Positions 5,847 to 49,329 are shown, counted from the stretch's first letter. The stretch is 64,000 bases of DNA from Mobula hypostoma (GCF_963921235.1 NC_086101.1:31496001-31560000); one strand, 5' to 3'. Program-made: numbers and translations. The notes: generated by a model from the letters alone, not told the origin.

Positions 5847-5913
5847 ATTTTGTAGCCTGTGCTCCACATATTAAAGCCGTCGCTAACACGAAGAAGTAAA
5901 CCTCAGCTCCCAT
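5847..5913 (-). CDS. Leader (signal peptide) exon 1 of an MHC class II alpha-chain-like gene; remaining exons probably left of the window
   Basis: ATG at 5913 gives MGAEVYFFVLATALICGAQATK + 1 nt, then a GTGAGT donor (phase 1, as in MHC leader exons). It has a hydrophobic core and a small-residue cleavage region. It resembles the nurse-shark class II alpha leader as I recall it (MEARNYFSVLVLVLIQGGWAGK). A canonical X-Y promoter lies ~150 bp upstream. Confidence 0.8.
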
Positions 5914-6064
5914 TCTTAATCTCCCGGGTCTCGCAAACGCGACCTCTCCTCGTCCAGCACCAGTTCCGCTCAATCTGCCACCAGTTTCTGCCACAGAATA
6001 AACCTAACTTCAGTCGTTCACTCTCGTGCAGTCTGTTATTGATATGCGCCTGAGGACAGCTGAA

Positions 6065-6129
6065 CCAATCAGACGCCGAGATTCTCACTCGTCATCTGTT
6101 TCCAGGTGGAATACATACCAATTTGCTCC
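6065..6129 (-). promoter_or_regulatory. MHC class II-type S-X1-X2-Y promoter module (module 1, proximal)
   Basis: X = CCTGGAAACAGATG (6106-6093; HLA-DRA recalled as CCTAGCAACAGATG). X2 = TGACGAG. Exact 20-bp spacer. Y = CTGATTGG (6072-6065). Weak S-position GGAGCAA 16 bp upstream of X. Confidence 0.85.
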
Positions 6130-17171: not shown

Positions 17172-17359
17172 TTAAATAGTCCAATGAGATGTAAACTGGA
17201 AAGCCCCTAGATCATGTTCAGGCATGTTGAAACTGGTTGATTAAAATTATCTGTTGATTTGCTCAACAGTAACTCCACCTCAGTTGCCACCATCACCTAA
17301 TGAGAGGGATGATCTCGCAGGCGTCACAGCTGCTGGCTAAAATGGATCAGTGAGAGTCT
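17172..17359 (-). promoter_or_regulatory. S-X-Y module 2 with downstream NF-kB site, second CCAAT and TATA-like box
   Basis: S-like AGACTCT (17359-17353), 15-bp spacer, X GCCAGCAGCTGTG with X2 TGACGCC, 20 bp, then mutated Y CTCATTAG (17304-17297). GGGGCTTTCC at 17207-17198, ATTGG at 17185-17181, TATTTAA at 17178-17172. Confidence 0.65.
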
Positions 17360-17589
17360 GAAATAGCTGGATTCAATTAGATTAGTTTATTGTCATGAAC
17401 ACCAGAAAGCAATGAAATTCTTTGCTCGCATGAAGCTAAAAGTGTAAACAGTGGAATTAGTAATAATAAATACAAAAATAAATACATCACCGAGCACAAA
17501 ATAACAGGGTGGTTCAGGGTTGCCCATGCTCCCCTGTCTTGTGTAGAGCCCCTTGCCAAGGCCTCAGGAAGGACGAGAACATAAGAGGT

Positions 17590-18570
17590 GTGACACTACC
17601 GGACAGTGGAAGGACCCAAGTGAAAACCATGTCATTGTCTTCTGCTCATATCTGTAGTCAGTTTGCAGAGTGATCAGCATCTGTGACCAGACTGAGTTGG
17701 CATCAGGGGCCAGGGTTAACCACACAAAGAGCAGGACCATGCTCTGCAGCAACTGGCCAGACTGATCCAGTGTCCCCTTCACCATCAGGTCCGATTATGT
17801 GAAGGTGCTGGGGATCTAGTTTGCAACAAGAATTGGCTGGAGTGGACTGGGGAGGTAAACAGAAATTGGGACTTTGGGGAGGGAGTCCCTGTCGGTAACT
17901 AGGAAGAACCTGGTCAGAGGTGCTCTCAGAGCTGCTGTACTTGGCACAGGTGTGGCCCATGCCCCACTCCTCCAGCTCAGCAGTCACCCGAGCTGTCTTC
18001 AGGTTAATCTGGAGATCCAGGATGGAGTGGGTCAGCTGAATCACAATGCACGTGTCCCTGGACAATTGGGGCAAAATATACCCAATGTCTCCTTCATCCT
18101 AATGACCACCTCTGTGTGTGGCTGCATCAGGCTGTACGTGGAACCTAAATACGTGGGCACCAAGTGCCACAACATGCCAACATTCTCCCTGTCCCCGGTG
18201 TCGTGAAGGAGGGGTTTGGCCCGGTTGCCGCGCAACATCCCAGTCAGCAGGATGGTGCCGCAGTACCTGTCCTTCATGGAAGGTTCATCAAGACCAATAC
18301 CTCTGACGACAAGGCCGTCAGCCAGTGGTCAGCATGGAACATCCTGCTGGCACTGAAGGAGAAGAATCTATGGATGCTGTGGGGGGGTTTCCTGAGCAGA
18401 CTGTCCAAATCTATCGTCAGAATGTCTCATCACCAAGCCTCACCTACAGGCACCAAGACCTCACCTGGCTGGAGGTGAGAAGAGCCCTCCCAGTCAGATC
18501 CTTCCTGCATGCTCGGAGAATCATCTGCACAACGCCCTGACCATGTGATGACTGCACTGGGAAAGAGACA
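17590..18570 (+). mobile_element. Tx1 LINE ORF2 internal fragment
   Basis: DYVKVLG, KLGLW.G.SLS, KNLV, NIPNV..ILMTT.VCGCIRL.VEPKYVGTKCH and HQDLTWL.VRRALPVRSFLHAR. Confidence 0.85.
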
Positions 18571-18904
18571 GTAGCTACACACACAAAATGCTGGGGGAAC
18601 TCCGCAGGCCAGGCAGCATCTATGGAAAAGAGTAAACAGTTGACATTTCAGACTGAGGCCCTTTCAGCATCTGCTTCTCATGTTTGTAGAGACAGTAGCT
18701 TACTTCCTTGCACATTATGGATTTGTGAAGAAATTAGGATTTGTGAAGAAATTATGGAGAAAGGTCCTGTGTCTGTTTTATCCTGAGCAGCTGTGTAACA
18801 GAGGACTCTCTGATCTATAGGCTGTTCCCAGGGATGCACACAGAGACAGACATCAAGTGCAGCTGGCAGATCATCCACTCCAGCGTGTGATGATCTTTGG
18901 TCAG

Positions 18905-20690
18905 CCCTCTGATTTTTGAATTTTCTCTGCATCTAGAAAATAGTCTCTGTCTTTATTTCTTCTACCAATGTGCGGGACCATCTACTTCCCTACACTCTAT
19001 TCCATCTTCCACTCTTTTGCCCATTCTCTCCATCTGTCAGTCCTCCTACAGATTCCCTGTTTCTTCAACACTACCAGCCCCTCCACCTATCCTCATATCA
19101 TCTGCAAACTTGGCCACAAAGTCATCAATTTCATCATCCAAATCTTTGATATGTAACGTGAAAAGAAACAATTCCAGCACCGATCCCTGTGGAAACTACT
19201 AATCACCAGCAGTCAACTAGAAAAGGCCCCGTTTATTCCCACTCTTTGCTTCCTGCCAATCAGCCAATCTTCTATCTTCCCTGTAATACCATGGGCTCTT
19301 ATCTTGTGAAGCAGTCTCATGTGTGACACCTTGCCAAAGACCTTCTGAAAATCCAAATAAACAACATCCATTGATTATCCTTTATCATCCTGCCCGTTAT
19401 TTCTTCAAAAAATTCCAACAGATTTTTCAGGCAAGATTTCTCCTTCAGAAAACCTTGCTGACTTTGATCTGTTTTATCATGTTTCTCCAAGTACATCTCC
19501 ACATCCTCAAGTTCCTCCTAGTCCATAATAATGGACTCCAACGTCTTCCCAACCTCTGAAGGTAGGCTAACTGGTCTATAATTTTCTTCCTTCTACCTCC
19601 ATCCCTTCTTAAAGAGTGGAGTGACATTTGCAATATTCCGATCTTCCGGAACCATTCCAGAATCTAGTGATTCTTGAACTATCATTACTAATACCTCCAC
19701 AATCTCTTCAGCTACCTCTTTCAGAACCCTGGTATGTAGTCCATCTTGTCCAGGTGACTGAACTACTTTCAGACCTTGCAGCTTCCCAAGCACCTTCTCC
19801 TTAGCAATAGCAATGGCACACACTTCTGCTCGCAACACTCTCAAATTTCTAGCATCTGTTGGTGTCTTCCACAGTGAAGACTGATGAAAAATAAAGTTCA
19901 TCCCCCATTCATTGTCCCCCATTACTTCCTCTCCAGTGTCATTATCCAGCACACTAATATCTACTCTCTCCTCTCTTTTACTCTTTATATATCTGAAAAA
20001 TTATATCCTCTTTTAATACTATTGGCTAGCTTACCTTTATAGTTCAAGTTTTGTCTTGTTATGGCACTTTTTTATTTGCCCTCTGTTGCATTTTAAAGCA
20101 TCTCAATTCCCTAACTTTCTAGTAATTCTTACGATATTATATGCCCTCTCTTTTGTTTTTATGCTGTTATAGACAGAGTCATAGAAAAGTACAACACAGA
20201 AACAGGCTCTTTGGCCCATCTCGTCCATGTCAAACTATTTAAACTGCCTAGACCCATTGATGTGCACCGGAACCATAACCATCTATATTTCTACCATCCA
20301 TGTACCTATCCAAACCTCTCTTGAATGTTGAAATTGAGACCACATGCACCACTTGTGCTGGCAGCTCGTTGCACACTCTCACGACTCTCTGAGTGAAGAC
20401 ATTTTCCTCATGTTCCCCTTAAATTTTTGCACCTTTCATCCTTAAAACATGACTTCCTGTTGTAGTCCCAACTAACCACAGTAGAAGAGGCCTACTTGCA
20501 TTTACCCTATTTATACCCTCATAATTATTATATACTTCAATTAAATCACCCCTCAACTTCTAACTTCCAAGGAATAAAGTCCTAATCTATTCAACCTTTC
20601 CTCATAGATTAGGTCATCCAGTTCCAATAACACTCTCATAAATTTTCCCTGTACTGTGCTCTTCCAACTTCATTTACATCTTTCCTGTAG
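18905..20690 (-). mobile_element. Adjacent CR1 fragments (central ORF2 18905-20160; 3' end 20170-20690)
   Basis: QSQQGFLKEKSCLKNLLEFFEE, SPGQDGLHTRVLKEVAEEIV and DRNIANVTPLFKKG, plus a CR1 tail. Confidence 0.88.
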
Positions 20691-23043
20691 GTAAGGCAAT
20701 GGATGTAGTGTATATGGATTTCAGTAAGGCATTTGCTAAGGTTCCTCATGCAAAGCTCTTTCAGAAAGTAAGGAGGCATGGGATCCAAGGAGACCTTGCT
20801 TTGTGGATCCAGAACTGGCTTGCCCACAGAAGGCAAAGAGTGGTTGTAGATGGTTCATATTCTGCATGGATGAACCATGTCTACGCCCACCTGGACAAGC
20901 CAGTGAGCATGGTGAGGGTCATGTTTTTTGACTTCTCCAGTGCGTTCACCACCATCCGCCCTGCTCTGCTGGGGGAGAAGCTGACAGCGATGCAGGTGGA
21001 TGCTTTCCTGGTGTCATGGATTCTTGATTACCTGACTGGCAGACCACAGTACGTGTGCTTGCAACACTGTGTGTCCGACAGAGTGATCAGCAGCACTGGG
21101 GCTCCACAGGGGACTGTCTTGTCTCCCATTGTCTTCACCATTTACACCTCGGACTTCAACTACTGCACAGAGTCTTGTCATCTTCAGAAGTTTTCTGATG
21201 ACTCTGCCATAGTTGGATGCATCAGCAAGGGAGATGAGGCTGAGTACAGGGCTACAGTAGGAAAGTTTGTCACACGGTGTGAGTAGAATTATCTGCAGCC
21301 TAATGTGAAAAAGACTAAACAGCTGGTGGTAGACCTGAGGAGAGCTAAGGTACCGGTGACCCCTTTTTCCATCCAGGGGGTCAGTGTGGACATGGTGGAA
21401 GATTACAAATACCTGGGGATACGAATTGGCAATAAACTGGACTGGTCAAAGAACATTGAGGCTGTCTACAAGAAGGGTCAGAGCTGTCTCTATTTCCTGA
21501 GGAGACTGAGGTCCTTTAACATCTGCTGGACGATGCTGAGGATGTTCTACGAGTCTGTGGTGGCCAGTGCAATCATGTTTGCTGTTGTGTGCTGGGGCAG
21601 CAGGCTGAGGGTAGCAGACACCAACAGGATCAACAAACTCATTTGTAAGGCCAGTGATGTTGTGGGGATGGAACTGGACTCTCTGATGGTGGTGTCTGAA
21701 AAGAGGATGCTGTCCAAGTTGCATGCCATCTTGGACAATGTCTCCCATCCACTACATAATGGACTGGTTGAGCACAGGACTACATTCAGCCAGAGACTCA
21801 TTCCACCGAGATGCAACACAGAGCATCATAGGAGGTCATTCCTGCCTGTGGCCATCAAACTTTACAACTCCTCCCTTGGAGGGTCAGACACCCTGAGCCA
21901 ATAGGCTGGTCCTGGATTTATTTCCTGGCATAATTTACATATTACTATTTAATTATTTATGGTTTTATTACTATTTAATTATTTATGGTTTTATTACTAT
22001 TTAATTATTTATGGTGCAACTGTAACGAAAACCAATTTCCCTCGGGATCAATAAAGTATGACTATGACTATGACTATGGTGACCAGTGGTGTTCTGCATG
22101 GATCTGTTCTGGGATCCCTTCTCTTTGAGATTTTTATAAATGTCCTGGATGACGAAGTAGAAGGATGAGTTAGTAAGTTTGTTGATAACACAGAAGTTGG
22201 AAGGTGGTGTGATAGTCTGGGGGTTGTCAGAGTCTACAGCGGGACATTGATAGGATGCAGAACTGGGCTGAGAAGTGGCATATGGAGTTCAACCCAGATA
22301 AGTGTGAAGTGGTTCATTTTGGTAGGTCAAATTTGATGACAGAATATTAATAGTAAGACTCTTGGCAGTGTGGAGGATCATAGATCTTGGGTCCATGTCC
22401 AAAGGGCACTCAAAGCTGCTGCGCAGGTGGACAGTGTTGTTAAGAAGGTATTTGGCGTGATGGTCTTCATCCACCATGGGATTGAGTTCGAGAACCATGG
22501 GGTAATGTTACAGCTATACAAGACCTTGGTCAGACCCCACTTGGAGTACTTTGTTCAGTTCTGGTCACCTTACTACAGGAAGGATGTGGATACTGTAGAG
22601 AGAGTGCAGAGGAGATTTACAAGGATGTTGCCTAGATTGGTGAGCATGCCTTATGAGAATAGGTTGAGTGAACTTGGTGTTTTCTCTTTGGAGCGACAGA
22701 GTATAAAAGGTGTATAAGATGAAGAGAGGTATTAACCATGTGGATAGCTAGAGGCTTTTTCCCAGGGCTGAAATGGCTAACATGAGGGGGTATAGTTTTA
22801 AGGTGCTTGGAAGTAGGCACAGAGGGGATGTCAGGGGTAAGTTTTTCACACAGAGAGTGGCGACAGTGGTAGAGGCAGATACAATCAGGTCTTTTAAGAG
22901 TCTCTTAGGTAGGTACATGGAGCTTAGAAAAATAGAGGGCTATGCAGTAGGGACATTCAAGGCAGTTTCTAGTGTAGGTTACATGGTCAGCACAACATTG
23001 TGTGCCAAAGGGCATGTAATGTGCTGTAGATTTCTATGTTCCA
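20690..23043 (+). mobile_element. CR1 3' half split by the Rex1 insertion (20690-20870 and 22078-23043)
   Basis: MDVVYMDFSKAF...GSYSAW stops at 20870. VTSGV resumes at 22078, followed by LVRPHLEYFVQFW. Confidence 0.9.
20871..22077 (+). mobile_element. 5'-truncated Rex1 (Rex1/Babar) LINE, nearly intact RT 3' portion
   Basis: RVMFFDFSSAFTTIRP, TGAPQGTVLSP, CHLQKFSDDSAIVGCI and KGQSCLYFLRRLRSF. AATAAA followed by a (tatgac)n tail. One stop near 21286. Confidence 0.93.
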
Positions 23044-24400: not shown

Positions 24401-27090
24401 CCACCTACCACTAAAACAGGTCTATGACAAATCTGTCTCCCTGGCTTCACACTCACCTTCAGAGCATCTGGACAATAAAAACACCTGTACTTGCAGCTCT
24501 GTCTTCAATTCCAAGCAAACTCATCACCAGGCTCTCAGTGTCGGGACTCAACCTTCCTTTGCAAATGGACCCTCAACTTCCACTTCCTTATCAACGGACG
24601 GCAATCAGTAAGGATAGGCAGCAACACCTCCTCCACAAGCATCCTCAACACTGGTGCCCCAGAAATACAGTATAGATCCTCAGCCCACCTCTTAATGTCC
24701 TGTACACTAATGGCTAGATCTAGCTCTAATTCCATCTACTAGTTTGCAAATGATACCACCACTATGGTCTGTATCTTAAATAACGATGAGTCAGAATACA
24801 AGAAGGAGATAGAGAACCTTGTGACATGATGTTACGCCAACAGCCATTTTCTGAATATCAGCAAAACAAAAGGGCTGGACATTGACTTCAGAAAGGAGGA
24901 GAAGTATGTGCTCCCCTTTACATCAATGGTGCTGAGTTCGAGAAGGTTGAGAGCTTCAAGTTCCAAAGAGTGACCGTCATCAAAAGCCTCTGCTGGTTCA
25001 ACCACTTTTTAAAAAAGGAGGGAGAGAGAAACCGGGGAACTATAGACCGGTTAGCCTAACATCGGTGGTGGGGAAAATGCTAGAGTCAGTTATCAAAGAT
25101 GTGATAACAGCACATTTGGAAAGCGGTGAAATCATCGGACAAAGTCAGCATGGATTTGTGAAAGGAAAATCATGCCTGACGAATCTCATAGAATTTTTTG
25201 AGGATGTAACTAGTAGAGTGGATAGGGGAGAACCAGTGGATGTGGTATATTTGGATTTTCAAAAGGCTTTTGACAAGGTCCCACACAGGAGATTAGTGTG
25301 CAAACTTAAAGCACACGGTATTGGGGGTAAGGTATTGATGTGGATAGAGAATTGGTTAGCAGACAGGAATCAAAGACTGGGAATAAACGGGACCTTTTCA
25401 GAATGGCAGGCAGTGACTAGTGGGGTACCGCAAGGCTCAGTGCTGGGACCCCAGTTGTTTACAATATATATTAATGACTTGGATGAGGGAATTAAATGCA
25501 GCATCTCCAAGTTTGCGGATGACATGAAGCTGGGCGGCAGTCTTAGCTGTGAGGAGGTTGCTAAGAGGATGCAGGGTAACTTGGATAGGTTAGGTGAGTG
25601 GGCAAATTCATGGCAGATGCAATTTTATGTGGATAAATATGAGGTTATCCACTTTGGTGGCAAAAACAGGAAAACAGATTATTATCTAAATGGTGGCCAA
25701 TTAGGAAAAGGGGAGGTGCAACGAGACCTGGGTGTCATTATACACCAGTCATTGAAAGTTGGCATGCAGTTACAGCAGGCGGTGAAAAAGGCGAATGGTA
25801 TGCTGGCATTCATAGCGAGAGGATTCGAGTACAGGAGTAGAGGAGGTACTACTGCAGTTGTACAAGGCCTTGGTGAGACCACACCTGGGGTATTGTGTGC
25901 AGTTTTGGTCCCCTAATCTGAGGAAAGACATTCTTGCCATAGAGGGAGTACAAAGAAGGTTCACCAGATTGATTCCTGGGATGGCAGGACTTTCATATGA
26001 TGAAAGACTGGATCGTCTAGGCTTATACTCTCTGGAATTTAGGAGATTGAAGGGGGATCTTATTGAAACGTATAAAATCCTAAAGGGATTGGGTAGGCTA
26101 GATGCAGGAAGATTGTTCCCGATGTTGGGGAGGTCTAGAACGAGGGGTCACAGTTTGAGGATAGAGGGGAAGCCTTTTAGGACTGAGATTAGGAAAAACT
26201 TCTTCACACAGAGAGTGGTGAATCTGTGGAATTCTCTGCCACAGGAAACAGTTGAGGCCAGTTCATTGGCTATATTTAAGAGGGAGTTAGATATGGCCCT
26301 TGTGGCTAAAGGGATCAGGGGGTATGGAGGGAAGGCTGGGGCGGGGTTCTGAGTTGGATGATCAGCCATGATTATACTGAATGGCGGTGCAGGCTCGAAG
26401 GGCCGAATGGCCTACTCCTGCACCTATTTTCTATGTTTCTATGTTTCTATGTAACTGCAATGACCAAGGAAATGTGCCAGCGCCCTTACTTCCTCAAGAG
26501 GCTAAAGAAACCTGGCATGCCCTTTTGACCCTCACCAATGAATGAACCATAGAAAGCATCCTATCTAGATGCATTGTGGATTCCTTTGCCCAAAGGAGGA
26601 AGAAACAGCAGAATTGTGGACACAGCTCAGTGCATCACAGAAACCAGCCTCCCCACAATGGACTCAGTCTATAGATCTCGCTGTCTTGATGGAGCAGCCA
26701 ACATAATCAAAGACTCACCACTCTGGATTCTCTCATCTTTCCCTCCTCCCCACCTCCCCACCTCCCCCATACCCTCACCCCCCGCCGCCACTCCCTTTGG
26801 ACAGAAGATACAAAAGCCTGAATGCACATACCATCTGTCATAAGAACATTTTCTTTTGCGCTGTTATAAAACTATTGAATGGTTTCCTTGCATGATAAGA
26901 TGAGTTCTTGACATCACAATCTATTTTGCCATGGCCTTGCACCTTATTGTCTGCCTGCATTGTACTTTCTCTGTAACTGTAACACTTTATTCTCCATTCT
27001 GTTATTCGTTTCCCTTGTACTGCCTCATTACACTGATGAGATGAAATGATCTGTAGGAATGGCATGCAAAACGAACTTTTTCACTGCATG
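24400..27090 (+). mobile_element. Old Rex1/Babar-type LINE split by a young CR1 (24400-25001 and 26453-27090)
   Basis: LNTGAP and KFANDT before the break; YFLKRLKK and AANIIKD after it. Confidence 0.75.
25002..26452 (+). mobile_element. Young 5'-truncated CR1 (RT 3' half)
   Basis: ORF 25065-25916 has YLDFQKAFDKVPH, GVPQGSVLGP and SKFADD, one frameshift near 25850 and a (ttctatgt)n tail. Confidence 0.95.
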
Positions 27091-27334
27091 ACAATAATAA
27101 ACCAATTTACTAATTCAAGGCCATGAGCCAAGTGCTTGAAGATAGATCCACTAGTCAGTAACAACATGTTGGGCTGATTGGACCTTTTCCTGCTGTATAA
27201 CTCTGTGACAGGGAGCTGCCTGGATTCCAAATGAAGCATTGAACTGTAAAGGGTTAACCTTTCCTGCTCAACTAGTGAAACTCCCTTGAACCTGACCAAG
27301 TGCATTGTACTGGGAAGAGAAATGCAAAGAAAAC

Positions 27335-27453
27335 TGGAAAGTCTCCGCTCCAGCCTCAACAGTAACTTCACACCCTGATCCACCATCAGCCAATGAGAGG
27401 ACAGAGCACCGAGCCATCACCAGTTGCTGGTTGAAATGGATCACTGTGGGTCA
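27335..27453 (-). promoter_or_regulatory. S-X-Y module 3 with NF-kB-like site
   Basis: S-like TGACCCA (27453-27447), 15-bp spacer, X ACCAGCAACTGGTG (27431-27418), 20 bp, Y CTCATTGG (27397-27390), and GAGACTTTCC (27344-27335). Confidence 0.75.
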
Positions 27454-30400
27454 GAAATGGTTGGAGGTGAAATGGATCACTGTGGGACAGAGATGGTTGG
27501 AGGTGAAATGGATCACTGTGGGACAGAGATGGTTGGAGGTGAAATGGATCACTGTGGGTAGAGATGGTTGGAGGTGAAATGGATCACTGTGGGTCAGAGA
27601 CGGTTGGAGGTGAAATGGATCACTGTGGGACAGAGATGGTTGGAGGTGAAATGGATCACTGTGGGTAGAGATGGTTGGAGGTGAAATGGATCACTGTGGG
27701 TCAGAGACGGTTGGAGCTGAAATGGATCACTGTGGGTCAGCAATGGTTGGAGGTGAAATGGATCACTGTGGGACAGAGACGGTTGGAGGTGAAATGGATC
27801 ACTGTGGGTCAGAGACGGTTGGAGGTGAAATGGATCACTGTGGGTCAGAGACGGTTGGAGGTGAAATGGATCACTGTGGGTCAGAGACGGTTGGAGGTGA
27901 AATGGATCACTGTGGGTCAGAGACGGTTGGAGGTGAAATGGATCACTGTGGGTAGAGACGGTTGGAGGTGAAATGGATCACTGTGGGTCAGAGACGGTTG
28001 GAGGTGAAATGGATCACTGTGGGTCAGAGATGGTTGGAGGTGAAATGGATCACTGTTGGTAGAGATGGTTGGAGGTGAAATGGATCACTGTTGGTAGAGA
28101 TGGTTGGAGGTGAAATGGATCACTGTGGGTCAGAGATGGTTGGAGGTGAAATGGATCACTGTTGGTAGAGATGGTTGGAGGTGAAATGGATCACTGTGGG
28201 TAGAGATGGTTGGAGGTGAAATGGATCACTGTGGGTCAGAGACGGTTGGAGGTGAAATGGATCACTGTGGGACAGAGATGGTTGGAGCTGAAATGGATCA
28301 CTGTGGGTCAGAGACGGTTGGAGGTGAAATGGATCACTGTGGGTCAGAGACGGTTGGAGGTGAAATGGATCACTGTGGGTCAGAGACGGTTGGAGGTGAA
28401 ATGGATCACTGTGGGTCAGAGACGGTTGGAGGTGAAATGGATCACTGTTGGTAGAGATGGTTGGAGGTGAAATGGATCACTGTTGGTAGAGATGATTGAA
28501 GGTGAAATGGATCACTGTGGGTCAGAGACGGTTGCAGGTGAAATGGATCACTGTGGGACAGAGATGGTTGGAGGTGAAATGGATCACTGTGGGACAGAGA
28601 CGGTTGGAGGTGAAATGGATCACTGTGGGTAGAGATGGTTGAAGGTGAAATGGATCACTGTGGGTCAGAGACGGTTGGAGGTGAAATGGATCACTGTGGG
28701 ACAGAGACGGTTGGAGGTGAAATGGATCACTGTGGGACAGAGATGGTTGGAGGTGAAATGGATCACTGTGGGTCAGAGACGGTTGGAGGTGAAATGGATC
28801 ACTGTGGGACAGAGATGGTTGGAGATGAAATGGATCACTGTGGGTCAGAGACGGTTGGAGGTGAAATGGATCACTGTGGGTCAGAGACGGTTGGAGGTGA
28901 AATGGATCACTGTGGGACAGAGATGGTTGGAGATGAAATGGATCACTGTGGGTCAGAGACGGTTGGAGGTGAAATGGATCACTGTGGGTCAGAGACGGTT
29001 GGAGGTGAAATGGATCACTGTGGGTAGAGATGGTTGGAGGTGAAATGGATCACTGTGGGTCAGAGACGGTTGGAGATGAAATGGATCACTGTGGGTAGAG
29101 ATGGTTGGAGGTGAAATGGATCACTGTGGGTCAGAGACGGTTGGAGGTGAAATGGATCACTGTGGGTCAGAGATGGTTGGAGGTGAAATGGATCACTGTG
29201 GGTCAGAGACGGTTGGAGGTGAAATGGATCAATGTGGGACAGAAATGGTTGGAGGTGAAATGGATCACTGTGGGACAGAGATGGTTGGAGCTGAAATGGA
29301 TCACTGTGGGTCAGAGACGGTTGGAGATGAAATGGATCACTGTGGGTCAGAGACGGTTGGAGGTGAAATGGATCACTGTGGGTCAGAGACGGTTGGAGAT
29401 GAAATGGATCACTGTGGGTAGAGATGGTTGGAGGTGAAATGGATCACTGTGGGACAGAGATGGTTGGAGATGAAATGGATCACTGTGGGTCAGAGACGGT
29501 TGGAGATGAAATGGATCACTGTGGGTCAGAGACGGTTGGAGGTGAAATGGATCACTGTGGGTCAGAGACGGTTGGAGGTGAAATGGATCACTGTGGGTCA
29601 GAGACGGTTGGAGGTGAAATGGATCACTGTGGGTCAGAGACGGTTGGAGGTGAAATGGATCACTGTGGGTCAGAGACGGTTGGAGGTGAAATGGATCACT
29701 GTGGGACAGAGATGGTTGGAGCTGAAATGGATCACTGTGGGTCAGAGACGGTTGGAGGTGAAATGGATCACTGTGGGTCAGAGACGTTGGAGGTGAAATG
29801 GATCACTGTGGGTCAGAGATGGTTGGAGGTGAAATGGATCACTGTGGGTCAGAGACGGTTGGAGGTGAAATGGATCACTGTGGGTCAGAGACGGTTGGAG
29901 GTGAAATGGATCACTGTGGGTAGAGATGGTTGGAGGTGAAATGGATCACTGTGGGTCAGAGACGGTTGGAGGTGAAATGGATCACTGTGGGTCAGAGATG
30001 GTTGGAGGTGAAATGGATCACTGTGGGTAGAGATGGTTGGAGGTGAAATGGATCACTGTGGGTCAGAGACGGTTGGAGGTGAAATGGATCACTGTGGGTC
30101 AGAGACGGTTGGAGGTGAAATGGATCACTGTGGGTCAGAGACGGTTGGAGGTGAAATGGATCACTGTGGGACAGAGATGGTTGGAGCTGAAATGGATCAC
30201 TGTGGGTCAGAGACGGTTGGAGGTGAAATGGATCACTGTGGGTAGAGACGGTTGGAGGTGGAATGGATCACTGTGGGTCAGAGACGGTTGGAGGTGAAAT
30301 GGATCACTGTGGGTCAGAGATGGTTGGAGGTGAAATGGATCACTGTTGGTAGAGATGGTTGGAGGTGAAATGGATCACTGTTGGTAGAGATGGTTGGAGG

Positions 30401-33400
30401 TGAAATGGATCACTGTGGGTCAGAGACGGTTGGAGGTGAAATGGATCACTGTGGGTCAGAGATGGTTGGAGGTGAAATGGATCACTGTGGGTAGAGATGG
30501 TTGGAGGTGAAATGGATCACTGTGGGTCAGAGACGGTTGGAGGTGAAATGGATCACTGTGGGACAGAGATGGTTGGAGGTGAAATGGATCACTGTGGGTA
30601 GAGATGGTTGGAGGTGAAATGGATCACTGTGGGTCAGAGACGGTTGGAGGTGAAATGGATCACTGTGGGTCAGAGACGGTTGGAGGTGAAATGGATCACT
30701 GTGGGTCAGAGACGGTTGGAGGTGAAATGGATCACTGTTGGTAGAGATGGTTGGAGGTGAAATGGATCACTGTTGGTAGAGATGGTTGAAGGTGAAATGG
30801 ATCACTGTGGGTCAGAGACGGTTGGAGGTGAAAATGGATCACTGTGGGTAGAGAGATGGTTGGAGATGAAATGGATCACTGTGGGTCAGAGACGGTGAGG
30901 TGAAATGGATCACTGTGGGTCAGAGACGGTGAAATGGATCACTGTGGGTCAGAGAGGTTGGAGATGAAATGGATCACTGTGGGTCAGAGACGGTTGGAGG
31001 TGAAATGGATCACTGTGGGTCAGAGACGGTTGGAGGTGAAATGGATCACTGTGGGTCAGAGATGGTTGGAGGTGAAATGAAATGGATCACTGTGGGTCAG
31101 AGACGGTTGGAGGTGAAATGGATCACTGTGGGTCAGAGACGGTTGGAGGTGAAATGGATCACTGTGGGTCAGAGACGGTTGGAGATGAAATGGATCACTG
31201 TGGGTCAGAGACGGTTGGAGGTGAAATGGATCACTGTGGGTCAGAGACGGTTGGAGTGAAATGGATCACTGTGGGTCAGAGACGGTTGGAGGTGAAATGG
31301 ATCACTGTGGGACAGAGATGGTTGGAGTGAAATGGATCACTGTGGGTAGAGACGGTTGGAGGTGAAATGGATCACTGTGGGTCAGAGACGGTTGGAGGTG
31401 AAATGGATCACTGTGGGTCAGAGACGGTTGGAGAGAAATGGATCACTGTGGGTCAGAGACGGTTGGAGGTGAAATGGATCACTGTGGGTCAGAGACGGTT
31501 GGAGGTGAAATGGATCACTGTGGGTCAGAGATGGTTGGAGGTGAAATGGATCACTGTGGGTAGAGATGGTTGGAGGTGAAATGGATCACTGTGGGTCAGA
31601 GACGGTTGGAGGTGAAATGGATCACTGTGGGTCAGAGACGGTTGGAGGTGAAATGGATCACTGTGGGTCAGAGACGGTTGGAGGTGAAATGGATCACTGT
31701 GGGACAGAGATGGTTGGAGGTGAAATGGATCACTGTGGGTCAGAGACGGTTGGAGGTGAAATGGATCACTGTGGGTCAGAGACGGTTGGAGGTGAAATGG
31801 ATCACTGTGGGTCAGAGACGGTTGGAGGTGAAATGGATCACTGTGGGTCAGAGACGGTTGGAGGTGAAATGGATCACTGTGGGTCAGAGACGGTTGGAGG
31901 TGAAATGGATCACTGTGGGTCAGAGAGGTTGGAGGTGAAATGGATCACTGTGGGTCAGAGACGGTTGGAGGTGAAATGGATCACTGTGGGTCAGAGACGG
32001 TTGGAGGTGAAACGGATCACTGTGGGTCAGAGACGGTTGGAGGTGAAATGGATCACTGTGGGTCAGAGACGGTTGGAGGTGAAATGGATCACTGTGGGTA
32101 GAGATGGTTGGAGGTGAAATGGATCACTGTGGGTCAGAGACGGTTGGAGGTGAAATGGATCACTGTGGGTCAGAGACGGTTGGAGGTGAAATGGATCACT
32201 GTGGGTAGAGACGGTTGGAGATGAAATGGATCACTGTGGGTCAGAGACGGTTGGAGGTGAAATGGATCACTGTGGGTCAGAGACGGTTGGAGGTGAAATG
32301 GATCACTGTGGGTCAGAGACGGTTGGAGGTGAAATGGATCACTGTGGGACAGAGACGGTTGGAGCTGAAATGGATCACTGTGGGTCAGAGACGGTTGGAG
32401 GTGAAATGGATCACTGTGGGTCAGAGACGGTTGGAGGTGAAATGGATCACTGTGGGTCAGAGACGGTTGGAGGTGAAATGGATCACTGTGGGTCAGAGAC
32501 GGTTGGAGGTGAAATGGATCACTGTGGGACAGAGACGGTTGGAGGTGAAATGGATCACTGTGGGTCAGAGACGGTTGGAGGTGAAATGGATCACTGTGGG
32601 TCAGAGACGGTTGGAGGTGAAATGGATCACTGTGGGACAGAGATGGTTGGAGGTGAAATGGATCACTGTGGGTCAGAGACGGTTGGAGGTGAAATGGATC
32701 ACTGTGGGTCAGAGACGGTTGGAGGTGAAATGGATCACTGTGGGACAGAGACGGTTGGAGGTGAAATGGATCACTGTGGGACAGAGATGGTTGGAGCTGA
32801 AATGGATCACTGTGGGTCAGAGACGGTTGGAGGTGAAATGGATCACTGTGGGACAGAGATGGTTGGAGGTGAAATGGATCACTGTGGGTAGAGATGGTTG
32901 GAGGTGAAATGGATCACTGTGGGTCAGAGACGGTTGGAGGTGAAATGGATCACTGTGGGTCAGAGACGGTTGGAGGTGAAATGGATCACTGTGGGTCAGA
33001 GACGGTTGGAGGTGAAATGGATCACTGTGGGTCAGAGATGGTTGGAGGTGAAATGGATCACTGTGGGTAGAGATGGTTGGAGGTGAAATGGATCACTGTG
33101 GGTCAGAGACGGTTGGAGGTGAAATGGATCACTGTGGGTCAGAGATGGTTGGAGGTGAAATGGATCACTGTGGGACAGAGATGGTTGGAGGTGAAATGGA
33201 TCACTGTGGGTCAGAGACGGTTGGAGGTGAAATGGATCACTGTGGGTAGAGATGGTTGGAGGTGAAATGGATCACTGTGGGTCAGAGACGGTTGGAGGTG
33301 AAATGGATCACTGTGGGTCAGAGACGGTTGGAGGTGAAATGGATCACTGTGGGTCAGAGACGGTTGGAGGTGAAATGGATCACTGTGGGACAGAGATGGT

Positions 33401-34384
33401 TGGAGGTGAAATGGATCACTGTGGGTCAGAGACGGTTGGAGGTGAAATGGATCACTGTGGGTCAGAGACGGTTGGAGGTGAAATGGATCACTGTGGGTCA
33501 GAGACGGTTGGAGGTGAAATGGATCACTGTGGGTCAGAGACGGTTGGAGGTGAAATGGATCACTGTGGGTAGAGATGGTTGGAGGTGAAATGGATCACTG
33601 TGGGTCAGAGACGGTTGGAGGTGAAATGGATCACTGTGGGTAGAGATGGTTGGAGGTGAAATGGATCACTGTGGGTCAGAGACGGTTGGAGGTGAAATGG
33701 ATCACTGTGGGTAGAGATGGTTGGAGGTGAAATGGATCACTGTGGGTAGAGATGGTTGGAGGTGAAATGGATCACTGTGGGTCAGAGACGGTTGGAGGTG
33801 AAATGGATCACTGTGGGTCAGAGACGGTTGGAGGTGAAATGGATCACTGTGGGTCAGAGACGGTTGGAGGTGAAATGGATCACTGTGGGTAGAGATGGTT
33901 GGAGGTGAAATGGATCACTGTGGGTCAGAGACGGTTGGAGGTGAAATGGATCACTGTGGGTCAGAGACGGTTGGAGGTGAAATGGATCACTGTGGGTCAG
34001 AGACGGTTGGAGGTGAAATGGATCACTGTGGGTCAGAGACGGTTGGAGGTGAAATGGATCACTGTGGGACAGAGATGGTTGGAGCTGAAATGGATCACTG
34101 TGGGTCAGAGACGGTTGGAGGTGAAATGGATCACTGTGGGTCAGAGACGGTTGGAGGTGAAATGGATCACTGTGGGTCAGAGACGGTTGGAGATGTAATG
34201 GATCACTGTGGGTAGAGATGGTTGGAGATGAAATGGATCACTGTGGGACAGAGATATGGTTGGAGATGAAATGGATCACTGTGGGTCAGAGACGGTTGGA
34301 GATTAAATGGATCACTGTGGGTAGAGATGGTTGAAGGTGAAATGGATCACTGTGGGACAGAGATGGTTGGAGATGAAATGGATC
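27432..34384. repeat. 36-bp minisatellite, ~190 copies (consensus ggttggaggtgaaatggatcactgtgggtcagagac; 35-bp ...gggtagagat variants)
   Basis: Directly visible. About 6.95 kb / 36 bp. One further unit lies at ~35087-35127 beyond the L1 insertion. Confidence 0.98.
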
Positions 34385-35086
34385 CTTTTGCTTTTAAATC
34401 TTTTTATTGAATAAGTATACAAAAAGGTAAGCCATATAAACATTAATACAATGTTAAAATATAATAAAATTACAGAAGGTATCAATACCAAAAAAGAATA
34501 CTACAAACAATGTAATTTAAACATAAGAAACCAAGATAACATAATAGTATACTAAATTTTATATATATATCAATAGAAGAAAAGAAAAAAAAAACCCCCA
34601 AAAAACCCACCGTGCAACTAACTAAAAGCAAAGCAAAGCAATGGGCTAACTTGAAACCAAACAAAGTTAAACTTAAAATCACGTCCTCAATCCCGACCTC
34701 CATTAAAAACAGTGAAAAAAAAACAAGAAGGGTATATATTACATTAAATGAAAATATCGAATAAAAGATCCCCAGGTCTGTTCAAATTTAAATGAAGAAT
34801 CATAAAGGTTACTTCTAATTTTCTCCAGATTCAAACATATTATCATCTGAGAGAACCAAAAAAAAGTAGTTGGAGCATTAAGCTCTTTCCAATGTTGTAA
34901 AATACATCTTTTCACCATTAAAGTAAGAAATGCAATCATTCTACGGGCTGAAGGGGAAAGATTACTAGAAATTTTAGGTAGTCCAAAGATAGCAGTAATA
35001 GGGTGAGGAGAGATATCTATATTTAATACCTTAGAAATAATATTGAAAATATCTCTCCAAAAAGTTTCCAAAGTAGGGCAAGACCA
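34385..35086 (-). mobile_element. 5'-truncated fish-type L1 3' end inserted in the distal end of the minisatellite
   Basis: ORF 34739-35071 (FWRDIF...IAFLTL..KRCILQHWK...LNLEKIR) is an L1 ORF2 C-terminus. A-rich 3' UTR with AATAAA. Array sequence lies on both sides. Confidence 0.88.
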
Positions 35087-35199
35087 ATGAGGTGAAATGG
35101 ATCACTGTGGGACAGAGACGGTTGGAGGCCTTCTCTGTATTGGCACCGAGTTCTGCCGAACCGCTGGACCACCAACCCAGGGGTAGTGTCTCTGCATCT

Positions 35200-35500
35200 C
35201 CTTGCTCCCCCATGAATCACATTGTCCCCGTACTCCAGGGAAGTTTGGAAACTCTCGGAGCCTGAGGAAACATACTCAGCATTTTAGGAACAGCTTCGTC
35301 CCCTTCGCCATCAGATTTCTGATCGATTCATGAACCTATAAACACGACCTCACTATTTTGCTCTTTTTGTTCAATATATCCAGCTATATTTCTTATTGTA
35401 ACTTACAGTGATTTTTAATGCATTGCACAGCACCGCTGCTGCATAACGGCAGATGTCTCGACATGTGCAGCTGATAATAAACCTGATTCTGATACTGATC
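35200..35500 (+). mobile_element. Rex1/Babar-type 3' end fragment
   Basis: HTQHFRNSF.PFAIRFL motif and a tail like 3110-3320. Confidence 0.65.
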
Positions 35501-40562: not shown

Positions 40563-41703
40563 ATAGAAACATAGAAACATAGAAAATAGGTGCAGGAGTA
40601 GGCCATTCGGCCCTTCGAGCCTGCACCGCCATTTATTATGATCATGGCTGATCATCCAACTCAGAACCCAGCCTTCCCTCCATACCCCCTGACCCCTGTA
40701 GCCACAAGGGCCATATCTAACTTCCTTTTAAACATAGCTAATGAACTGGCCTCAACAGTTTGCTGTGGCAGAGAATTCCACAGATTCACCACTCTCTGTG
40801 TGAAGAAGTTTTTCCTAACCTCGGTCCTAAAAGGCTTCCCCTCTATCCTCAAACTGTGACCCCTCGTTCTAGACCTCCCCAACATCGGGAACAATCTTCC
40901 CGCATCTAGCCTGTCCAATCCCTTTAGGATCTTATACGTTTCAATCAGATCCCCCCTCAATCTTCTAAATTCCAACGAGTACAAGCCCAGTTCATCCAGT
41001 CTTTCTTCATATGAAAGACCTGCCATCCCAGGAATCAATCTGGTGAACCTTCTTTGTACTCCCTCTATGGCAAAGATGTCTTTCCTCAGATTAGGGGACC
41101 AAAACTGCACACAATACTCCAGGTGTGGTCTCACCAAGGCCTTGTACAACTGCAGTAGTACCTCCCTGCTCCTGTACTCGAATCCTCTCGCTATAAATGC
41201 CAGCATACCGTTCGCCTTTTTCACCGCCTGCTGTACCTGCATGCCCACTTTCAATGACTGGTGTATAATGACACCCAGGTCTCGTTGCACCTCCCCTTTT
41301 CCTAATCGGCCACCATTCAGATAATAATCTGTTTTCCTATTTTTGCCACCAAAGTGGATAACTTCACATTTATCCACATTAAATTGCATCTGCCATGAGT
41401 TTGCCCACTCACCCAACCTATCCAAGTCACCCTGCATCCTCTTAGCATCCTCCTCACTGCTAACACTGCCACCCAGCTTTGTGTCATCCGCAAACTTGGA
41501 GATGCTGCATTTAATTCCCTCATCCAAGTCATTAATATATATTGTAAACAACTGGGGTCCCAGCAGTGAGCCTTGCGGTACCCCACTAGTCACCGCCTGC
41601 CATTCTGAAAAGGTCCCGTTTATTCCCACTCTTTGCTTCCTGTCTGCTAACCAATTCTCCACCCACACCAATACCTTACCCCCAATACCGTGTGCTTTAA
41701 GTT
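40563..41703 (-). mobile_element. Young 5'-truncated CR1 with an uninterrupted RT C-terminal ORF
   Basis: ORF 40661-41671 (336 aa, GVPQGSLLGP, SKFADD) is near-identical to the 25002-26452 copy and has the same tail. Confidence 0.95.
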
Positions 41704-42765: not shown

Positions 42766-44293
42766 TGTCGCAATGGGGGGGGGGGGGGCATTGGGAGCAA
42801 GGGTGGACACAAATGCAAGACACATCTTGTGAGGTTACTTAGATTTAGTTTATTGTTTGATACCAGGAGAGCAAGGCAGGAGCAGGAAATAGCAAACTGG
42901 ACAAGGATTCAGGACTACGACTAGGCTGGGACAAGGGTCTGAGCTTGGAGTCGGAATTGGATCCCAGAACTAGCGGAGACATGAAGAGGCTACGGTAGGA
43001 CTCTGAGACAGAGACTGGGCAAGGACCCAGTACCTGGGTTGTGCCCCGGGCTCGGACCCCAGAACCAGGCATGGACATGACATGGGCTAGGGAGAGGAGG
43101 AACATGGAAAACAGAGCCTTGGTCTCGGGAGAACAGGTACATGGAACCATGGACACATACACAGAACAGAGAGCCAGGACCCCTCCTTGGGTACAGGACA
43201 TAGGGCCAGGATTCACACACAGAACAGAGAGCCGGGACCCCTCCTTGGGTACAGGACATAGGGCCGGGACTCATGAACCCCCGCGGGGCAACGGCAAGAT
43301 GGCCTGACTTACCCCACGGAGGCGAGGACAAGACACGACAAGACATGACCCCCCGTGGGGCAACGGCAAGACGGCCTGACTTACCCCACGGAGGCGAGGA
43401 CAAGACACAACAAGACATGAGCCCCCGCGGGGCAACGGCAAAACGGCCAGACTTACCCCACGGAGGCGAGGACAAGACAAGACCAACACGAAAGTACACC
43501 AGACAGTACCTATCTAGCTCCGACAATAGAACTAGACCAAGGTGCAGGCCAGGGCTGCAGACGAGGGCTAGAGGCGAGAGGGGCAGAGAAGGGATTCAGA
43601 TGGGGGGTAGGACAGGAATCACAGACCGCCAGGGCCAGGACTTGAGATGGTACTTGGATGCGCCAGGGACAGGACTTGACTCGGAACCTGGATGCCGCCA
43701 GGACCAGGACTTGACTCGGTACGTGGATGCGCCAGGCCCGGGACTTGACTCGGTACTTGGATGCTGCTAGGGTCCTGACTTGACTCTGTACTTGGATGCC
43801 GCCAGGCCCAGGACTTGACTTGGTACTTGAATGCCCCCAGAGCCAGGACTTGACTTGGAGCCTCCAGGTAGTGGCGAGCTCTCAACTCGGCCTGGGAAGA
43901 GTAGACAGCGGTTCCTGATTCCCTCCAGCGGGTTACCTAACGGACCCACCTCGATGAGGAAACTTTGCAGGCTTGTTTTGGTGAGGTAACTTGACAGGGG
44001 TGCTCCGGTGAGGAAAGGCAAATTACCGGCACTCGCTTCGGGCAGAGACTAGGCTTGCTCCGGCCAGATGACATTGGCACGCCGTACCTTTGGTGACTTT
44101 GCAGACGCTCCCGCGCCGAACAGCTGAAAGCCGGAGACTATAAACTACCAGTTCAGCCGAGAGTAAATTGCCTCTAATCACCAAGGCCAAGGGACACAGG
44201 AAAACAGGGAACCAAAGGGAAACAGGGAGTCAACGGTCCGGATCGTAACATAAACAAAGTAAATTTAAAGAGACCCTGATCCGGACCATGACA
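42766..44293 (-). mobile_element. Solo LTR (~1.5 kb) with internal tandem repeats
   Basis: TGTC...GACA termini; 5-bp TSD ttctc/ttccc; AATAAA near the minus-strand 3' end; internal ~57-bp x2, ~69-bp x3 and ~34-bp x6-7 arrays. Confidence 0.75.
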
Positions 44294-48298: not shown

Positions 48299-49329
48299 CA
48301 GAAACAGCAGAGAAACAATCGGCGGTGGGTTGCGGGTGCAACAAAAGAATATGAAACACACTGGAATTGAAATTCATTTATTGTTACGGAAGAAGTTTTT
48401 ATTTATTGTGTGCAGAGAGAAATTTAAAAGAGACTTGAGAGGCAACCTCATCTCACAGAGGAAAATACAAACATGGAATGAGCTACCAGAGGAAGTGTTG
48501 TGGCACTTCCAATGGGTCAACAGGTTGAGAAGGATATGGGCCAAACGTGGGGAAATGGCGGTGGTTTAGATGGGCATGTTGGATGGAATAGGCCAAATGG
48601 GCCGAAGAGCCTGTCTCTGTGCTGTACAAATATATGAATATATGATTCAGAAAGGGAAAGGGGCGGCTGGAAAATCTCAACTACAATCAGAAAAACTGCA
48701 ACCTCTCAAACCGCAGTCATTAACGTGAGGAGAGAAGCCAATGAAACAGCACGGCTTCAGTTTGTCACCTGTTGCTGGGTAGATTTGTTTTTGAATTTGT
48801 GGGCTGGCGGAGGCACCCCTGGGTGATTGGACTTGGCTAAATGGAGGAGATGAAGGAGGGCAGAGGAGAGGGATAAATTACCATGTTGGAACTGTGATAA
48901 CAGACCAGATGCTGGAAATATCCAGCTCAGGCAGTGGCAGTGGGGAGATTCGGGAACAGTTATAACACCTCGACCATCAGGCCTTTGAACCAGAGGAGAC
49001 AGCTTCACTCCCGCCATCACTGAATTGTTCTCACAACTTATGGTCTCACTTTCAAGGACTTCATCTTGATATTTATGAATATTTATTAATTTATTATTAT
49101 TTCCTTTATTTCTTTTTGTATTTACAGTTTGTTGTCTTCAGCACATCAGTTGTTTCTCCGTCCTGTTGGATGCAGCCTTTCATTGATTCCATTGTTTCTT
49201 GTATTACTGAGAATGCCAGCAAGAAGATGAATCTCAGAGTTGCATTTGATGATATTGTTTCTTGTATTTTAAGAATGACAGCAGAATCAACAGAGCAGGA
49301 AGCTCAAGAAGGGATTGTACAGTATGGAC

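What the first reader, a model, noticed from the sequence alone, without database searches (positions are those of the whole stretch)
27335..34384. ~190-copy minisatellite appears to be an amplified S-box/spacer/degenerate-X segment of the adjacent enhancer module
Seen: on the minus strand the 36-bp unit parses as TGACCCA (7) + CAGTGATCCATTTCA (15) + CCTCCAACCGTCTC (14). The first 22 bp are exactly the S-position and S-X spacer of module 3. The last 14 bp share CC..CAAC.G with the intact X box (CCAGCAACTGGTG). The array runs directly into the intact X-Y. The paralogous module at 17.3 kb has the same spacer (CACTGATCCATTTTA) in single copy, which suggests the unit came from the enhancer. Inference: a 7-kb array of partial enhanceosome sites could act as a VNTR rheostat, a decoy for RFX-complex factors or a silenced block, and so affect class II expression.
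Basis: partly seen in the sequence, partly recalled or inferred. Interest (0 to 1): 0.85.

Follow-up and report, generated by a model that had tools for sequence, protein, structure and literature searches.

The report
S-box minisatellite beside ray MHC module
A 36-base stretch just upstream of a conserved MHC class II-type X-Y control module has been copied head to tail about 195 times in this ray but stands once or twice in related species, so it is a young, locally born minisatellite whose effect on gene control is untested.

Summary
The array is real: 36-bp period, 194.3 copies, 95% matches, 27432-34384. It is slightly longer than reported. A 708-bp L1-like fragment with an 11-bp target duplication (34385-35092) splits off a last unit at 35093-35128.

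- All 36 bp of the proximal unit align with single-copy sequence at the paralogous module at 17.3 kb.
- In contigs of three related species the X box is followed by one unit and then by the sequence that here lies beyond the array. Two relatives may hold two units.
- Word depth in the species' own DNA run fits about 10^2 copies, so this is not a dispersed satellite.

The X-Y core (27348-27428) shows no listed change in four relatives, while its flank differs by 5-11%.

The 'degenerate X' parse is at chance level: 8/13 matches, reached by 27% of shuffled units.

No evidence supports a rheostat, decoy or silencing role. One RNA run shows no coverage, and the factor that binds the S box is unknown even in mammals.

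The most likely reading is a lineage-specific, probably neutral expansion that leaves one S-X-Y module intact. Other first-stage notes on this window describe the modules, none describes this array.

The parts
27348..27428 (-). Conserved core of module 3. It holds the Y box (CCAAT at 27390-27394 on +), an X2-like site (27411-27419), most of X1, and 40 bp on the gene-proximal side of Y.
   Evidence: AGCAAC-N28-ATTGG matches exactly at 27390-27428. No difference is listed here in four related species, while 27128-27347 differs by 5-11%.
27418..27430 (-). X1 box, CCAGCAACTGGTG. Relatives read CTAGCAACTGGTG.
   Evidence: The changes at 27429 G>A and 27431 T>C in three relatives are.
27432..27467 (-). 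Proximal unit of ancestral type. It carries the S-position heptamer TGACCCA (27447-27453) 19 bp from AGCAAC, and the unique AGAAATGG variant.
   Evidence: It aligns with 17338-17371 of module 2 and with the relatives' single unit.
27432..34384 (.). Main block of the 36-bp minisatellite, about 194 units and at least 10 recurrent variants. The + strand is 41% G and 10% C.
34385..35092 (-). 5'-truncated L1-like retrotransposon fragment inserted into the array. It is flanked by an 11-bp direct repeat (34374-34384 and 35093-35103). An AATAAA-containing 3' end lies at the 34385 side.
   Evidence: Atlas neighbours are zf-RVT, DUF1725 and LORF2. There is no Pfam hit.
35093..35128 (.). Last unit of the array, cut off from the rest by the L1-like insertion.
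35129..35256 (.). Distal flank, not TE-like. In related species its start follows directly after their one or two units.
   Evidence: Loose ends at 27469 in organisms F, C and D align to 35131-35154 with 19/23 identity. TE homology begins only at 35257.
17262..17371 (-). Paralogous module 2, with Y-like, X2 and X1 boxes and a single-copy homologue of the whole unit (17338-17371).

Best explanation
The array is a lineage-specific minisatellite. It arose by tandem amplification (replication slippage, then unequal exchange) of a 36-bp single-copy segment lying immediately upstream of the X box of an orphan, evolutionarily conserved MHC class II-type S-X-Y module.

The segment consists of the S-position heptamer, the 15-bp S-X spacer and 14 bp of upstream flank. 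Because duplication was head to tail, the proximal unit still sits at its native distance from X-Y, so one complete S-X-Y module survives. The other roughly 194 units push whatever lay upstream about 7.7 kb away.

Shown:
- the local origin of the unit;
- one or two copies in relatives;
- about 10^2 copies in this species;
- the later L1-like insertion;
- conservation of the X-Y core.

Inferred:
- the slippage and unequal-exchange mechanism;
- that the array is selectively neutral or nearly so and has no dedicated regulatory function.
For: 1. Paralogue: 27355-27465 aligns with 17262-17371 at 75.9% over 112 bp. This covers Y, X and the entire first unit, which is single copy there.
2. Relatives: in organisms F, C and D a contig runs from the module through one unit to 27469. 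It then continues with sequence that aligns to 35131-35154, the window's distal flank.
3. Depth in relatives: unit depth is about 1-2.5 times the single-copy depth.
4. Polarity: the unit next to X keeps AGAAATGG, as in module 2. The bulk units read AGAGACGG or AGAGATGG, and units 2-3 are of the GGGACA type, which also precedes the flank in relatives B and C.
5. Own-species depth: single-copy depth is 4.95. Array bins read 85-132 (GGGACA-type units) and 551-560 (TGGGTCA-type units), or about 17-27x and 111-113x. The array itself holds 31 and 127 such units. TE bins in the same table reach 10^4-10^6.
6. The distal flank 35129-35256 and the unit show no homology to the window's TE copies.
7. The module is a credible S-X-Y. 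AGCAAC-N28-ATTGG is exact at two modules, with about 0.03 expected (my estimate for 11 fixed bases on two strands). S lies 19 bp from AGCAAC. The tight spacing constraint is described in PMC4374748 and PMC4381081.
Against: - The data from relatives are short-read Logan contigs from coded species, not long reads. Contigs in B and C break or branch inside the unit, so small arrays of 2 to a few units cannot be excluded there.
- Depth from contigs is explicitly not a copy number.
- Neutrality is a default, not a result. 127 of 194 units keep the S heptamer, and the array sits against a core that is under constraint, so an effect on that module is conceivable.
- No individual other than the assembled one could be examined.
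Confidence: 0.7

Rival explanations
1. The array is a functional VNTR. Its many S-box-bearing units would bind S-box or RFX-complex factors, or change local chromatin. Array length would then tune, sequester or silence the adjacent module and so affect class II expression.
For: - 127 of 194 units keep TGACCCA.
- The array abuts a core with no listed change in four relatives.
- Promoter-proximal G-rich minisatellites can modulate transcription; the INS VNTR is the usual example (listed, otherwise from general knowledge).
- S-motif duplications have been noted in mammalian class II promoters (PMC6155461).
Against: - The units lack X1, X2 and Y. Enhanceosome assembly needs cooperative RFX-CREB-NF-Y binding at fixed spacing, and no S/W-binding factor is known (PMC4381081, PMC4374748).
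- The resemblance to X is at chance level.
- The array is absent or minimal in relatives, so it has no history of conservation.
- No transcript covers the module in the RNA run laid.
- No class II exon lies downstream of the module.
Confidence: 0.12
2. The array is a mildly harmful or silencing by-product. The G-rich, CpG-bearing repeat would become methylated or heterochromatic and would be inactivating an orphan module that is on its way to decay.
For: - 121 units carry a CpG and 68 carry the TpG form of the same site.
- An L1-like fragment has inserted into the array.
- Module 3 has a weak X2 (TGATGGC). The kB-like and octamer-like motifs downstream are not conserved in relatives.
- There is no RNA coverage.
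Against: - TG, not CG, appears to be the ancestral state at that site, as seen in the first unit and in module 2. The TpG units therefore need not be products of deamination.
- CpG observed/expected in the array (0.44) is not below that of the rest of the window (0.31).
- The X-Y core is unchanged in this species relative to its relatives, apart from 27429 and 27431.
Confidence: 0.1
3. The unit belongs to a transposable element or a dispersed satellite, and its position next to the X box is incidental.
For: - The window is dominated by LINE fragments.
- A LINE 3' fragment lies 130 bp beyond the array.
Against: - Depth indicates about 10^2 copies, matching this one array, whereas TE bins reach 10^4-10^6.
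- The unit is single copy in the paralogue and in relatives.
- There is no TE homology before 35257.
- The only other hit in the window is the split-off last unit.
Confidence: 0.03
4. The length of the array is an assembly artefact.
For: Long tandem arrays are prone to mis-assembly, and no read spanning the array could be examined.
Against: - Word depth of unit contigs in a run from the same sample scales with the unit-type counts in the assembly.
- A contig confirms the junction from module to unit 1 to unit 2 (record 8).
- The interspersed variant pattern is not what a collapsed or inflated repeat gives.
Confidence: 0.03

Closest known systems
Human INS VNTR and similar promoter-proximal minisatellites
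   Same: A G-rich minisatellite of tens to hundreds of units lying directly upstream of a regulatory region. This is the model behind the 'rheostat' idea.
   Different: The INS unit is 14-15 bp and does not derive from a named enhanceosome box. Its alleles are documented and tied to expression. Here neither polymorphism nor any effect is shown.
Small duplications of promoter boxes in mammalian MHC class II genes (S-motif duplications in mouse and human; T-box and 11-bp duplications in cetaceans, PMC6155461)
   Same: A short piece of a class II proximal regulatory region, at or next to S, is duplicated in tandem in some lineages and not in close relatives.
   Different: Those are 2-3 copies of 11-22 bp. 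This is about 195 copies of 36 bp spanning 7 kb, and it lies at an orphan module, not at a known gene promoter.
Orphan X-box-like (XL) modules of the human MHC-II region, such as XL9 (PMC2292219, PMC7041702)
   Same: An X-Y-type module away from any class II exon within an MHC-II neighbourhood, possibly a distal regulatory element. This concerns the module, not the array.
   Different: XL9 works through CTCF and looping and carries no minisatellite. Factor binding at the ray module is untested.
Ordinary vertebrate minisatellites born from unique sequence
   Same: The unit length, strand asymmetry, interspersed variants with more heterogeneous ends, and a later TE insertion all match.
   Different: Only the source sequence is unusual, since it holds a recognisable regulatory box.

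Membership tests
Minisatellite / VNTR | Head-to-tail array of a 10-100 bp unit, many copies, with internal variants | tested here: met
   36 bp x 194.3 copies at 95% matches. There are 10 recurrent variants plus 27 singletons.
Minisatellite / VNTR | Copy number varies among individuals | not testable with these tools
   All usable DNA runs of the species come from one sample. Between species the number differs: one or two units against about 195.
MHC class II S-X-Y module (the element the unit is said to come from) | X1 RFX-type box and a Y (CCAAT) box at the constrained spacing | tested here: met
   AGCAAC-N28-ATTGG is exact at 27390-27428 and again at 48738-48776. Module 1 has GGAAAC-N28-ATTGG. 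The HLA-DRA spacing that I recall from memory is also 28. The constraint is described in PMC4381081 and PMC4374748.
MHC class II S-X-Y module (the element the unit is said to come from) | X2 (CRE-like) site next to X1 | tested here: inconclusive
   Module 3 reads TGATGGC, which is weak. Paralogue module 2 reads TGACGCC and module 1 reads TGACGAG.
MHC class II S-X-Y module (the element the unit is said to come from) | S/W box about 15-20 bp upstream of X | tested here: met
   TGACCC lies 19 bp before AGCAAC. S within 16 bp of the X motif is reported in PMC4374748.
MHC class II S-X-Y module (the element the unit is said to come from) | Occupied by RFX, CREB, NF-Y and CIITA, and drives a class II pathway gene | not testable with these tools
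   No binding data exist. There is no leader or Ig-domain exon downstream and no RNA coverage in one run. Sequence constraint on the core is the only indirect support.
Array of X-box-like (RFX) sites, the 'degenerate X' reading | The unit holds a better-than-chance match to the X1 box | tested here: not met
   The best match is 8/13, and 1353 of 5000 shuffled units reach it.
Dispersed or TE-borne satellite | Unit present at many unrelated loci or inside a TE consensus | tested here: not met
   Depth is about 10^2 times single copy and matches the counts in the array. There is no TE homology. The unit is single copy in relatives.

The most novel reading that the evidence does not exclude
The expansion created a species-specific block of about 130 intact S-box heptamers against a constrained X-Y core. 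This block measurably changes the activity of that orphan module, by titrating the still unidentified S/W-box factor or by setting local chromatin, and so changes class II expression. If so, it would be a natural handle for finding what binds the S box.
Probability: 0.08. Interest if true: 0.7.

Novelty: new member of a known kind. Interest (0 to 1): 0.35.

Why it matters
As it stands this is a clean, datable example of how a minisatellite is born from unique sequence. The source segment, the ancestral state of one or two copies in relatives, and the expanded state are all visible.

It is of wider interest only if the array turns out to affect the adjacent module. In that case it would be the first VNTR made of an MHC enhanceosome box and a tool for studying the S/W box, whose binding protein is unknown.

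The side result may be worth more than the array. An 81-bp X-Y core far from any class II exon is essentially unchanged in four related species while its flanks differ by 5-11%. This argues that orphan S-X-Y modules in cartilaginous fish are under constraint.

Tried and rejected
- **Class II exons next to the module.** No [FYW]xCx[VA]xH Ig-C1 signature occurs in any frame of the window. ORFs downstream of modules 2 and 3 are TE fragments or lack a signal peptide.
- **TE origin of the unit.** Local alignments of 35060-35360 to five LINE or SINE copies in the window give homology only from 35257.
- **Homology resuming beyond the TE at module 2.** The best local score for 35129-35256 against 17372-21000 (22) is below the shuffle maximum (29).
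- **'Degenerate X'.** Rejected by shuffling.
- **Rfam scan of the window.** No hits.
- **Pfam on the 117-aa insert ORF.** No hits. Its L1 identity rests on Atlas neighbours and on my recognition of the ORF2 C-terminal motif.
- **RNA evidence.** One RNA run of the species has zero depth over 27128-27650. The tissue is unknown, so this is weak.
- **Literature searches.** I found no report of a promoter minisatellite in elasmobranch MHC.
- **Higher-order repeat structure.** None is evident in the variant map.

Full report
**1. The observation**

Tandem Repeats Finder reports one dominant array at 27432-34384: period 36, 194.3 copies, 95% matches, 1% indels. A 20-mer from the unit matches 195 times within three mismatches, against 0.01 expected.

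The first unit starts at 27432, one base after the X1 box at 27418-27430.

Cutting the array into units gives 10 recurrent variants plus 27 singletons. The commonest variant occurs 95 times. There is no higher-order period, and the most irregular units lie in a mid-array stretch (about 30.1-31.2 kb) and near the two ends. The + strand is 41% G and 10% C.

The array is longer than reported. It breaks off at 34384 in the middle of a unit. A complete unit follows at 35093-35128, after 708 bp of AT-rich sequence.
- The insert is flanked by the same 11 bases, TGAAATGGATC, on both sides.
- On the minus strand it ends with an AATAAA-containing tail.
- It encodes 117 residues that look like the C-terminus of an L1 ORF2.
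- Pfam finds nothing in it. Its nearest Atlas clusters and their structural neighbours are zf-RVT, DUF1725 and LORF2.

I read this as a 5'-truncated L1-type insertion into a pre-existing array.

**2. Where the unit came from**

The array's last unit necessarily occupies the 'S position', so its match to the S position proves nothing. The independent evidence is the paralogue and the orthologues.

*Paralogue.* A self-comparison aligns 27355-27465 with 17262-17371 at 75.9% over 112 bp. This covers Y, X2, X1 and the entire first unit (about 27 of 36 positions by my own count), not just 22 bp. At 17.3 kb that segment is single copy and is followed by an unrelated repeat. The unit next to the X box is the only one that reads AGAAATGG, as module 2 does (TGAAATAG). 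The bulk units read AGAGACGG or AGAGATGG.

*Orthologues.* The unique island 27128-27467 is held in part by runs of at least seven other coded organisms. I laid contigs of four of them on 27128-27540.
- In organisms F, C and D a contig comes from the module, crosses exactly one unit to 27469, and then leaves the reference.
- Its loose end aligns to 35131-35154, the sequence just beyond the last unit in this window. Identity is 19/23, with a 6-7 bp indel.
- Unit depth in the relatives stays within about 1-2.5 times the single-copy depth.
- In organisms B and C, other contigs either span one unit-unit junction or show a GGGACA-type unit directly before the flank. These two species may therefore hold two units.
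- In this window, units 2 and 3 are of that same GGGACA type. This fits the proximal end being the oldest part of the array.

*Dispersal.* In a run from the species' own sample the unique island has word depth 4.95.
- Bins over GGGACA-type units read 85-132, and bins over TGGGTCA-type units read 551-560. That is about 17-27x and 111-113x.
- The array itself holds 31 and 127 such units.
- TE-derived bins in the same table reach 10^4 to 3x10^6.

The tool warns that summed contig depth is not a copy number, so I use only the order of magnitude. The genome holds on the order of 10^2 units, which this array accounts for.

*Transposable elements.* Homology to the window's LINE and SINE copies starts only at 35257. 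The 128 bp after the array and the unit itself show none.

They date the large expansion to after the split from species that differ by about 5-11% in the flanking sequence. The relatives are coded and I could not name them.

**3. Is the neighbouring element a real S-X-Y module?**

- The pattern AGCAAC-N28-ATTGG occurs exactly at 27390-27428 and again at 48738-48776. My estimate of the chance expectation for 11 fixed bases on two strands of 64 kb is about 0.03.
- Module 1, near 6.06-6.11 kb, reads GGAAAC-N28-ATTGG with a TGACG X2 site. It is followed by a 22-codon signal-peptide exon that ends in a phase-1 GTGAGT donor, at 5847-5913 on the minus strand.
- The heptamer TGACCC lies 19 bp before AGCAAC.
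- From memory, the HLA-DRA promoter has 28 and 20 bp at the corresponding places. That S, X and Y are tightly constrained in spacing is stated in PMC4374748 and PMC4381081.
- The three relatives whose contigs cover 27429 (B, C and F) read CTAGCAAC, which is closer to the mammalian X1.
- Between 27348 and 27428 no difference is listed for any of the four relatives. Contig totals allow at most one unlisted difference in B, D and F and at most three in C.
- By contrast, 27128-27347 carries about 30 variable sites in 220 bp. The X-Y core therefore looks constrained.
- The kB-like and octamer-like motifs downstream (27320-27347) are variable. The unit itself has 1-3 variable sites in 36 bp, which does not differ clearly from the flank.

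No class II exon accompanies modules 2 or 3. No Ig-C1 signature occurs anywhere in the window, and the large ORFs are reverse-transcriptase fragments. They are orphan modules.

**4. The 'degenerate X' sub-claim**

The best ungapped match of the 13-bp X1 box anywhere in the circularised unit, on either strand, is 8/13. Of 5000 shuffled units, 1353 do as well. The paralogue and the orthologues show that these 14 bp are simply what lay upstream of S before the duplication.

**5. What the array most likely does**

Head-to-tail duplication of a segment that ends one base from X1 leaves the proximal copy in its native register. One full S-X-Y survives, and 127 of 194 units carry extra S heptamers without X or Y.

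Known enhanceosome assembly needs cooperative RFX, CREB and NF-Y binding at fixed spacing. The protein that reads S/W is still unidentified (PMC4381081, PMC4374748). I therefore see no mechanistic basis yet for a decoy.

The array is young, it has already accepted a retrotransposon, and it has no RNA coverage in the one RNA run available (tissue unknown). Another first-stage note on this genome describes a minisatellite born from a splice acceptor, which suggests that such local expansions are common here.

- I put about 0.7 on a locally born, lineage-specific and probably neutral minisatellite.
- I put about 0.1 each on a tuning or decoy role and on a silencing role.
- I put a few percent each on TE origin or dispersal and on an assembly artefact.

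**6. Comparison with what is known, and novelty**

Small tandem duplications of class II promoter boxes, including S motifs, have been noted in mammals (PMC6155461). Promoter-proximal minisatellites that modulate transcription are known, with the INS VNTR as the usual example. Orphan X-box-like modules exist in the human MHC-II region (PMC2292219). I found no report of a large minisatellite made from an S box, nor of one in elasmobranch MHC.

It is a new member of a known kind. Interest is moderate (0.35).

Noticed in passing
window 34385-35092 (minus strand): 5'-truncated L1-like ORF2 C-terminal fragment inserted into the array, with a perfect 11-bp target-site duplication. It gives a minimum age order: array first, insertion later.
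   Followed up: partly
window 27348-27428: An 81-bp X-Y core plus 40 bp beyond Y shows no listed change in four related species, whereas the adjacent 220 bp has about 30 variable sites. The kB-like (27336-27346) and octamer-like (27320-27329) motifs are not conserved.
   Followed up: partly
window 5847-6110 (minus strand): Module 1 has a near-canonical X1-X2-Y (GGAAAC-N28-ATTGG, X2 TGACG). About 125 bp downstream of the Y box (CCAAT near 6066-6070, ATG at 5913) lies a 22-codon signal-peptide exon with a phase-1 GTGAGT donor. The rest of the gene must lie before the window's start.
   Followed up: partly
window 48738-48776 (minus strand): A further exact AGCAAC-N28-ATTGG module (module 4) with no recognisable exon nearby.
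   Followed up: no
window 27460-27476 and every unit junction: Each junction reads GGTTGGAGGTGAAATGG, with four GG runs separated by short loops on the G-rich strand. This could in principle form a two-tetrad G-quadruplex. I did not test it.
   Followed up: no
window 25500-26450 vs 40563-41506 and 51341-52270: Three copies of the same LINE reverse-transcriptase segment. The first pair is 93.8% identical, which points to fairly recent activity of that family.
   Followed up: no
window 43151-43855: A cluster of three short GC-rich minisatellites (58-, 72- and 35/69-bp units, 2-7 copies) of unknown origin.
   Followed up: no
window 27164-27209: A 40-bp piece inside the otherwise unique island also occurs in several unrelated contigs in all relatives, at 2-4 times single-copy depth. 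It is a small dispersed repeat or a conserved motif.
   Followed up: no
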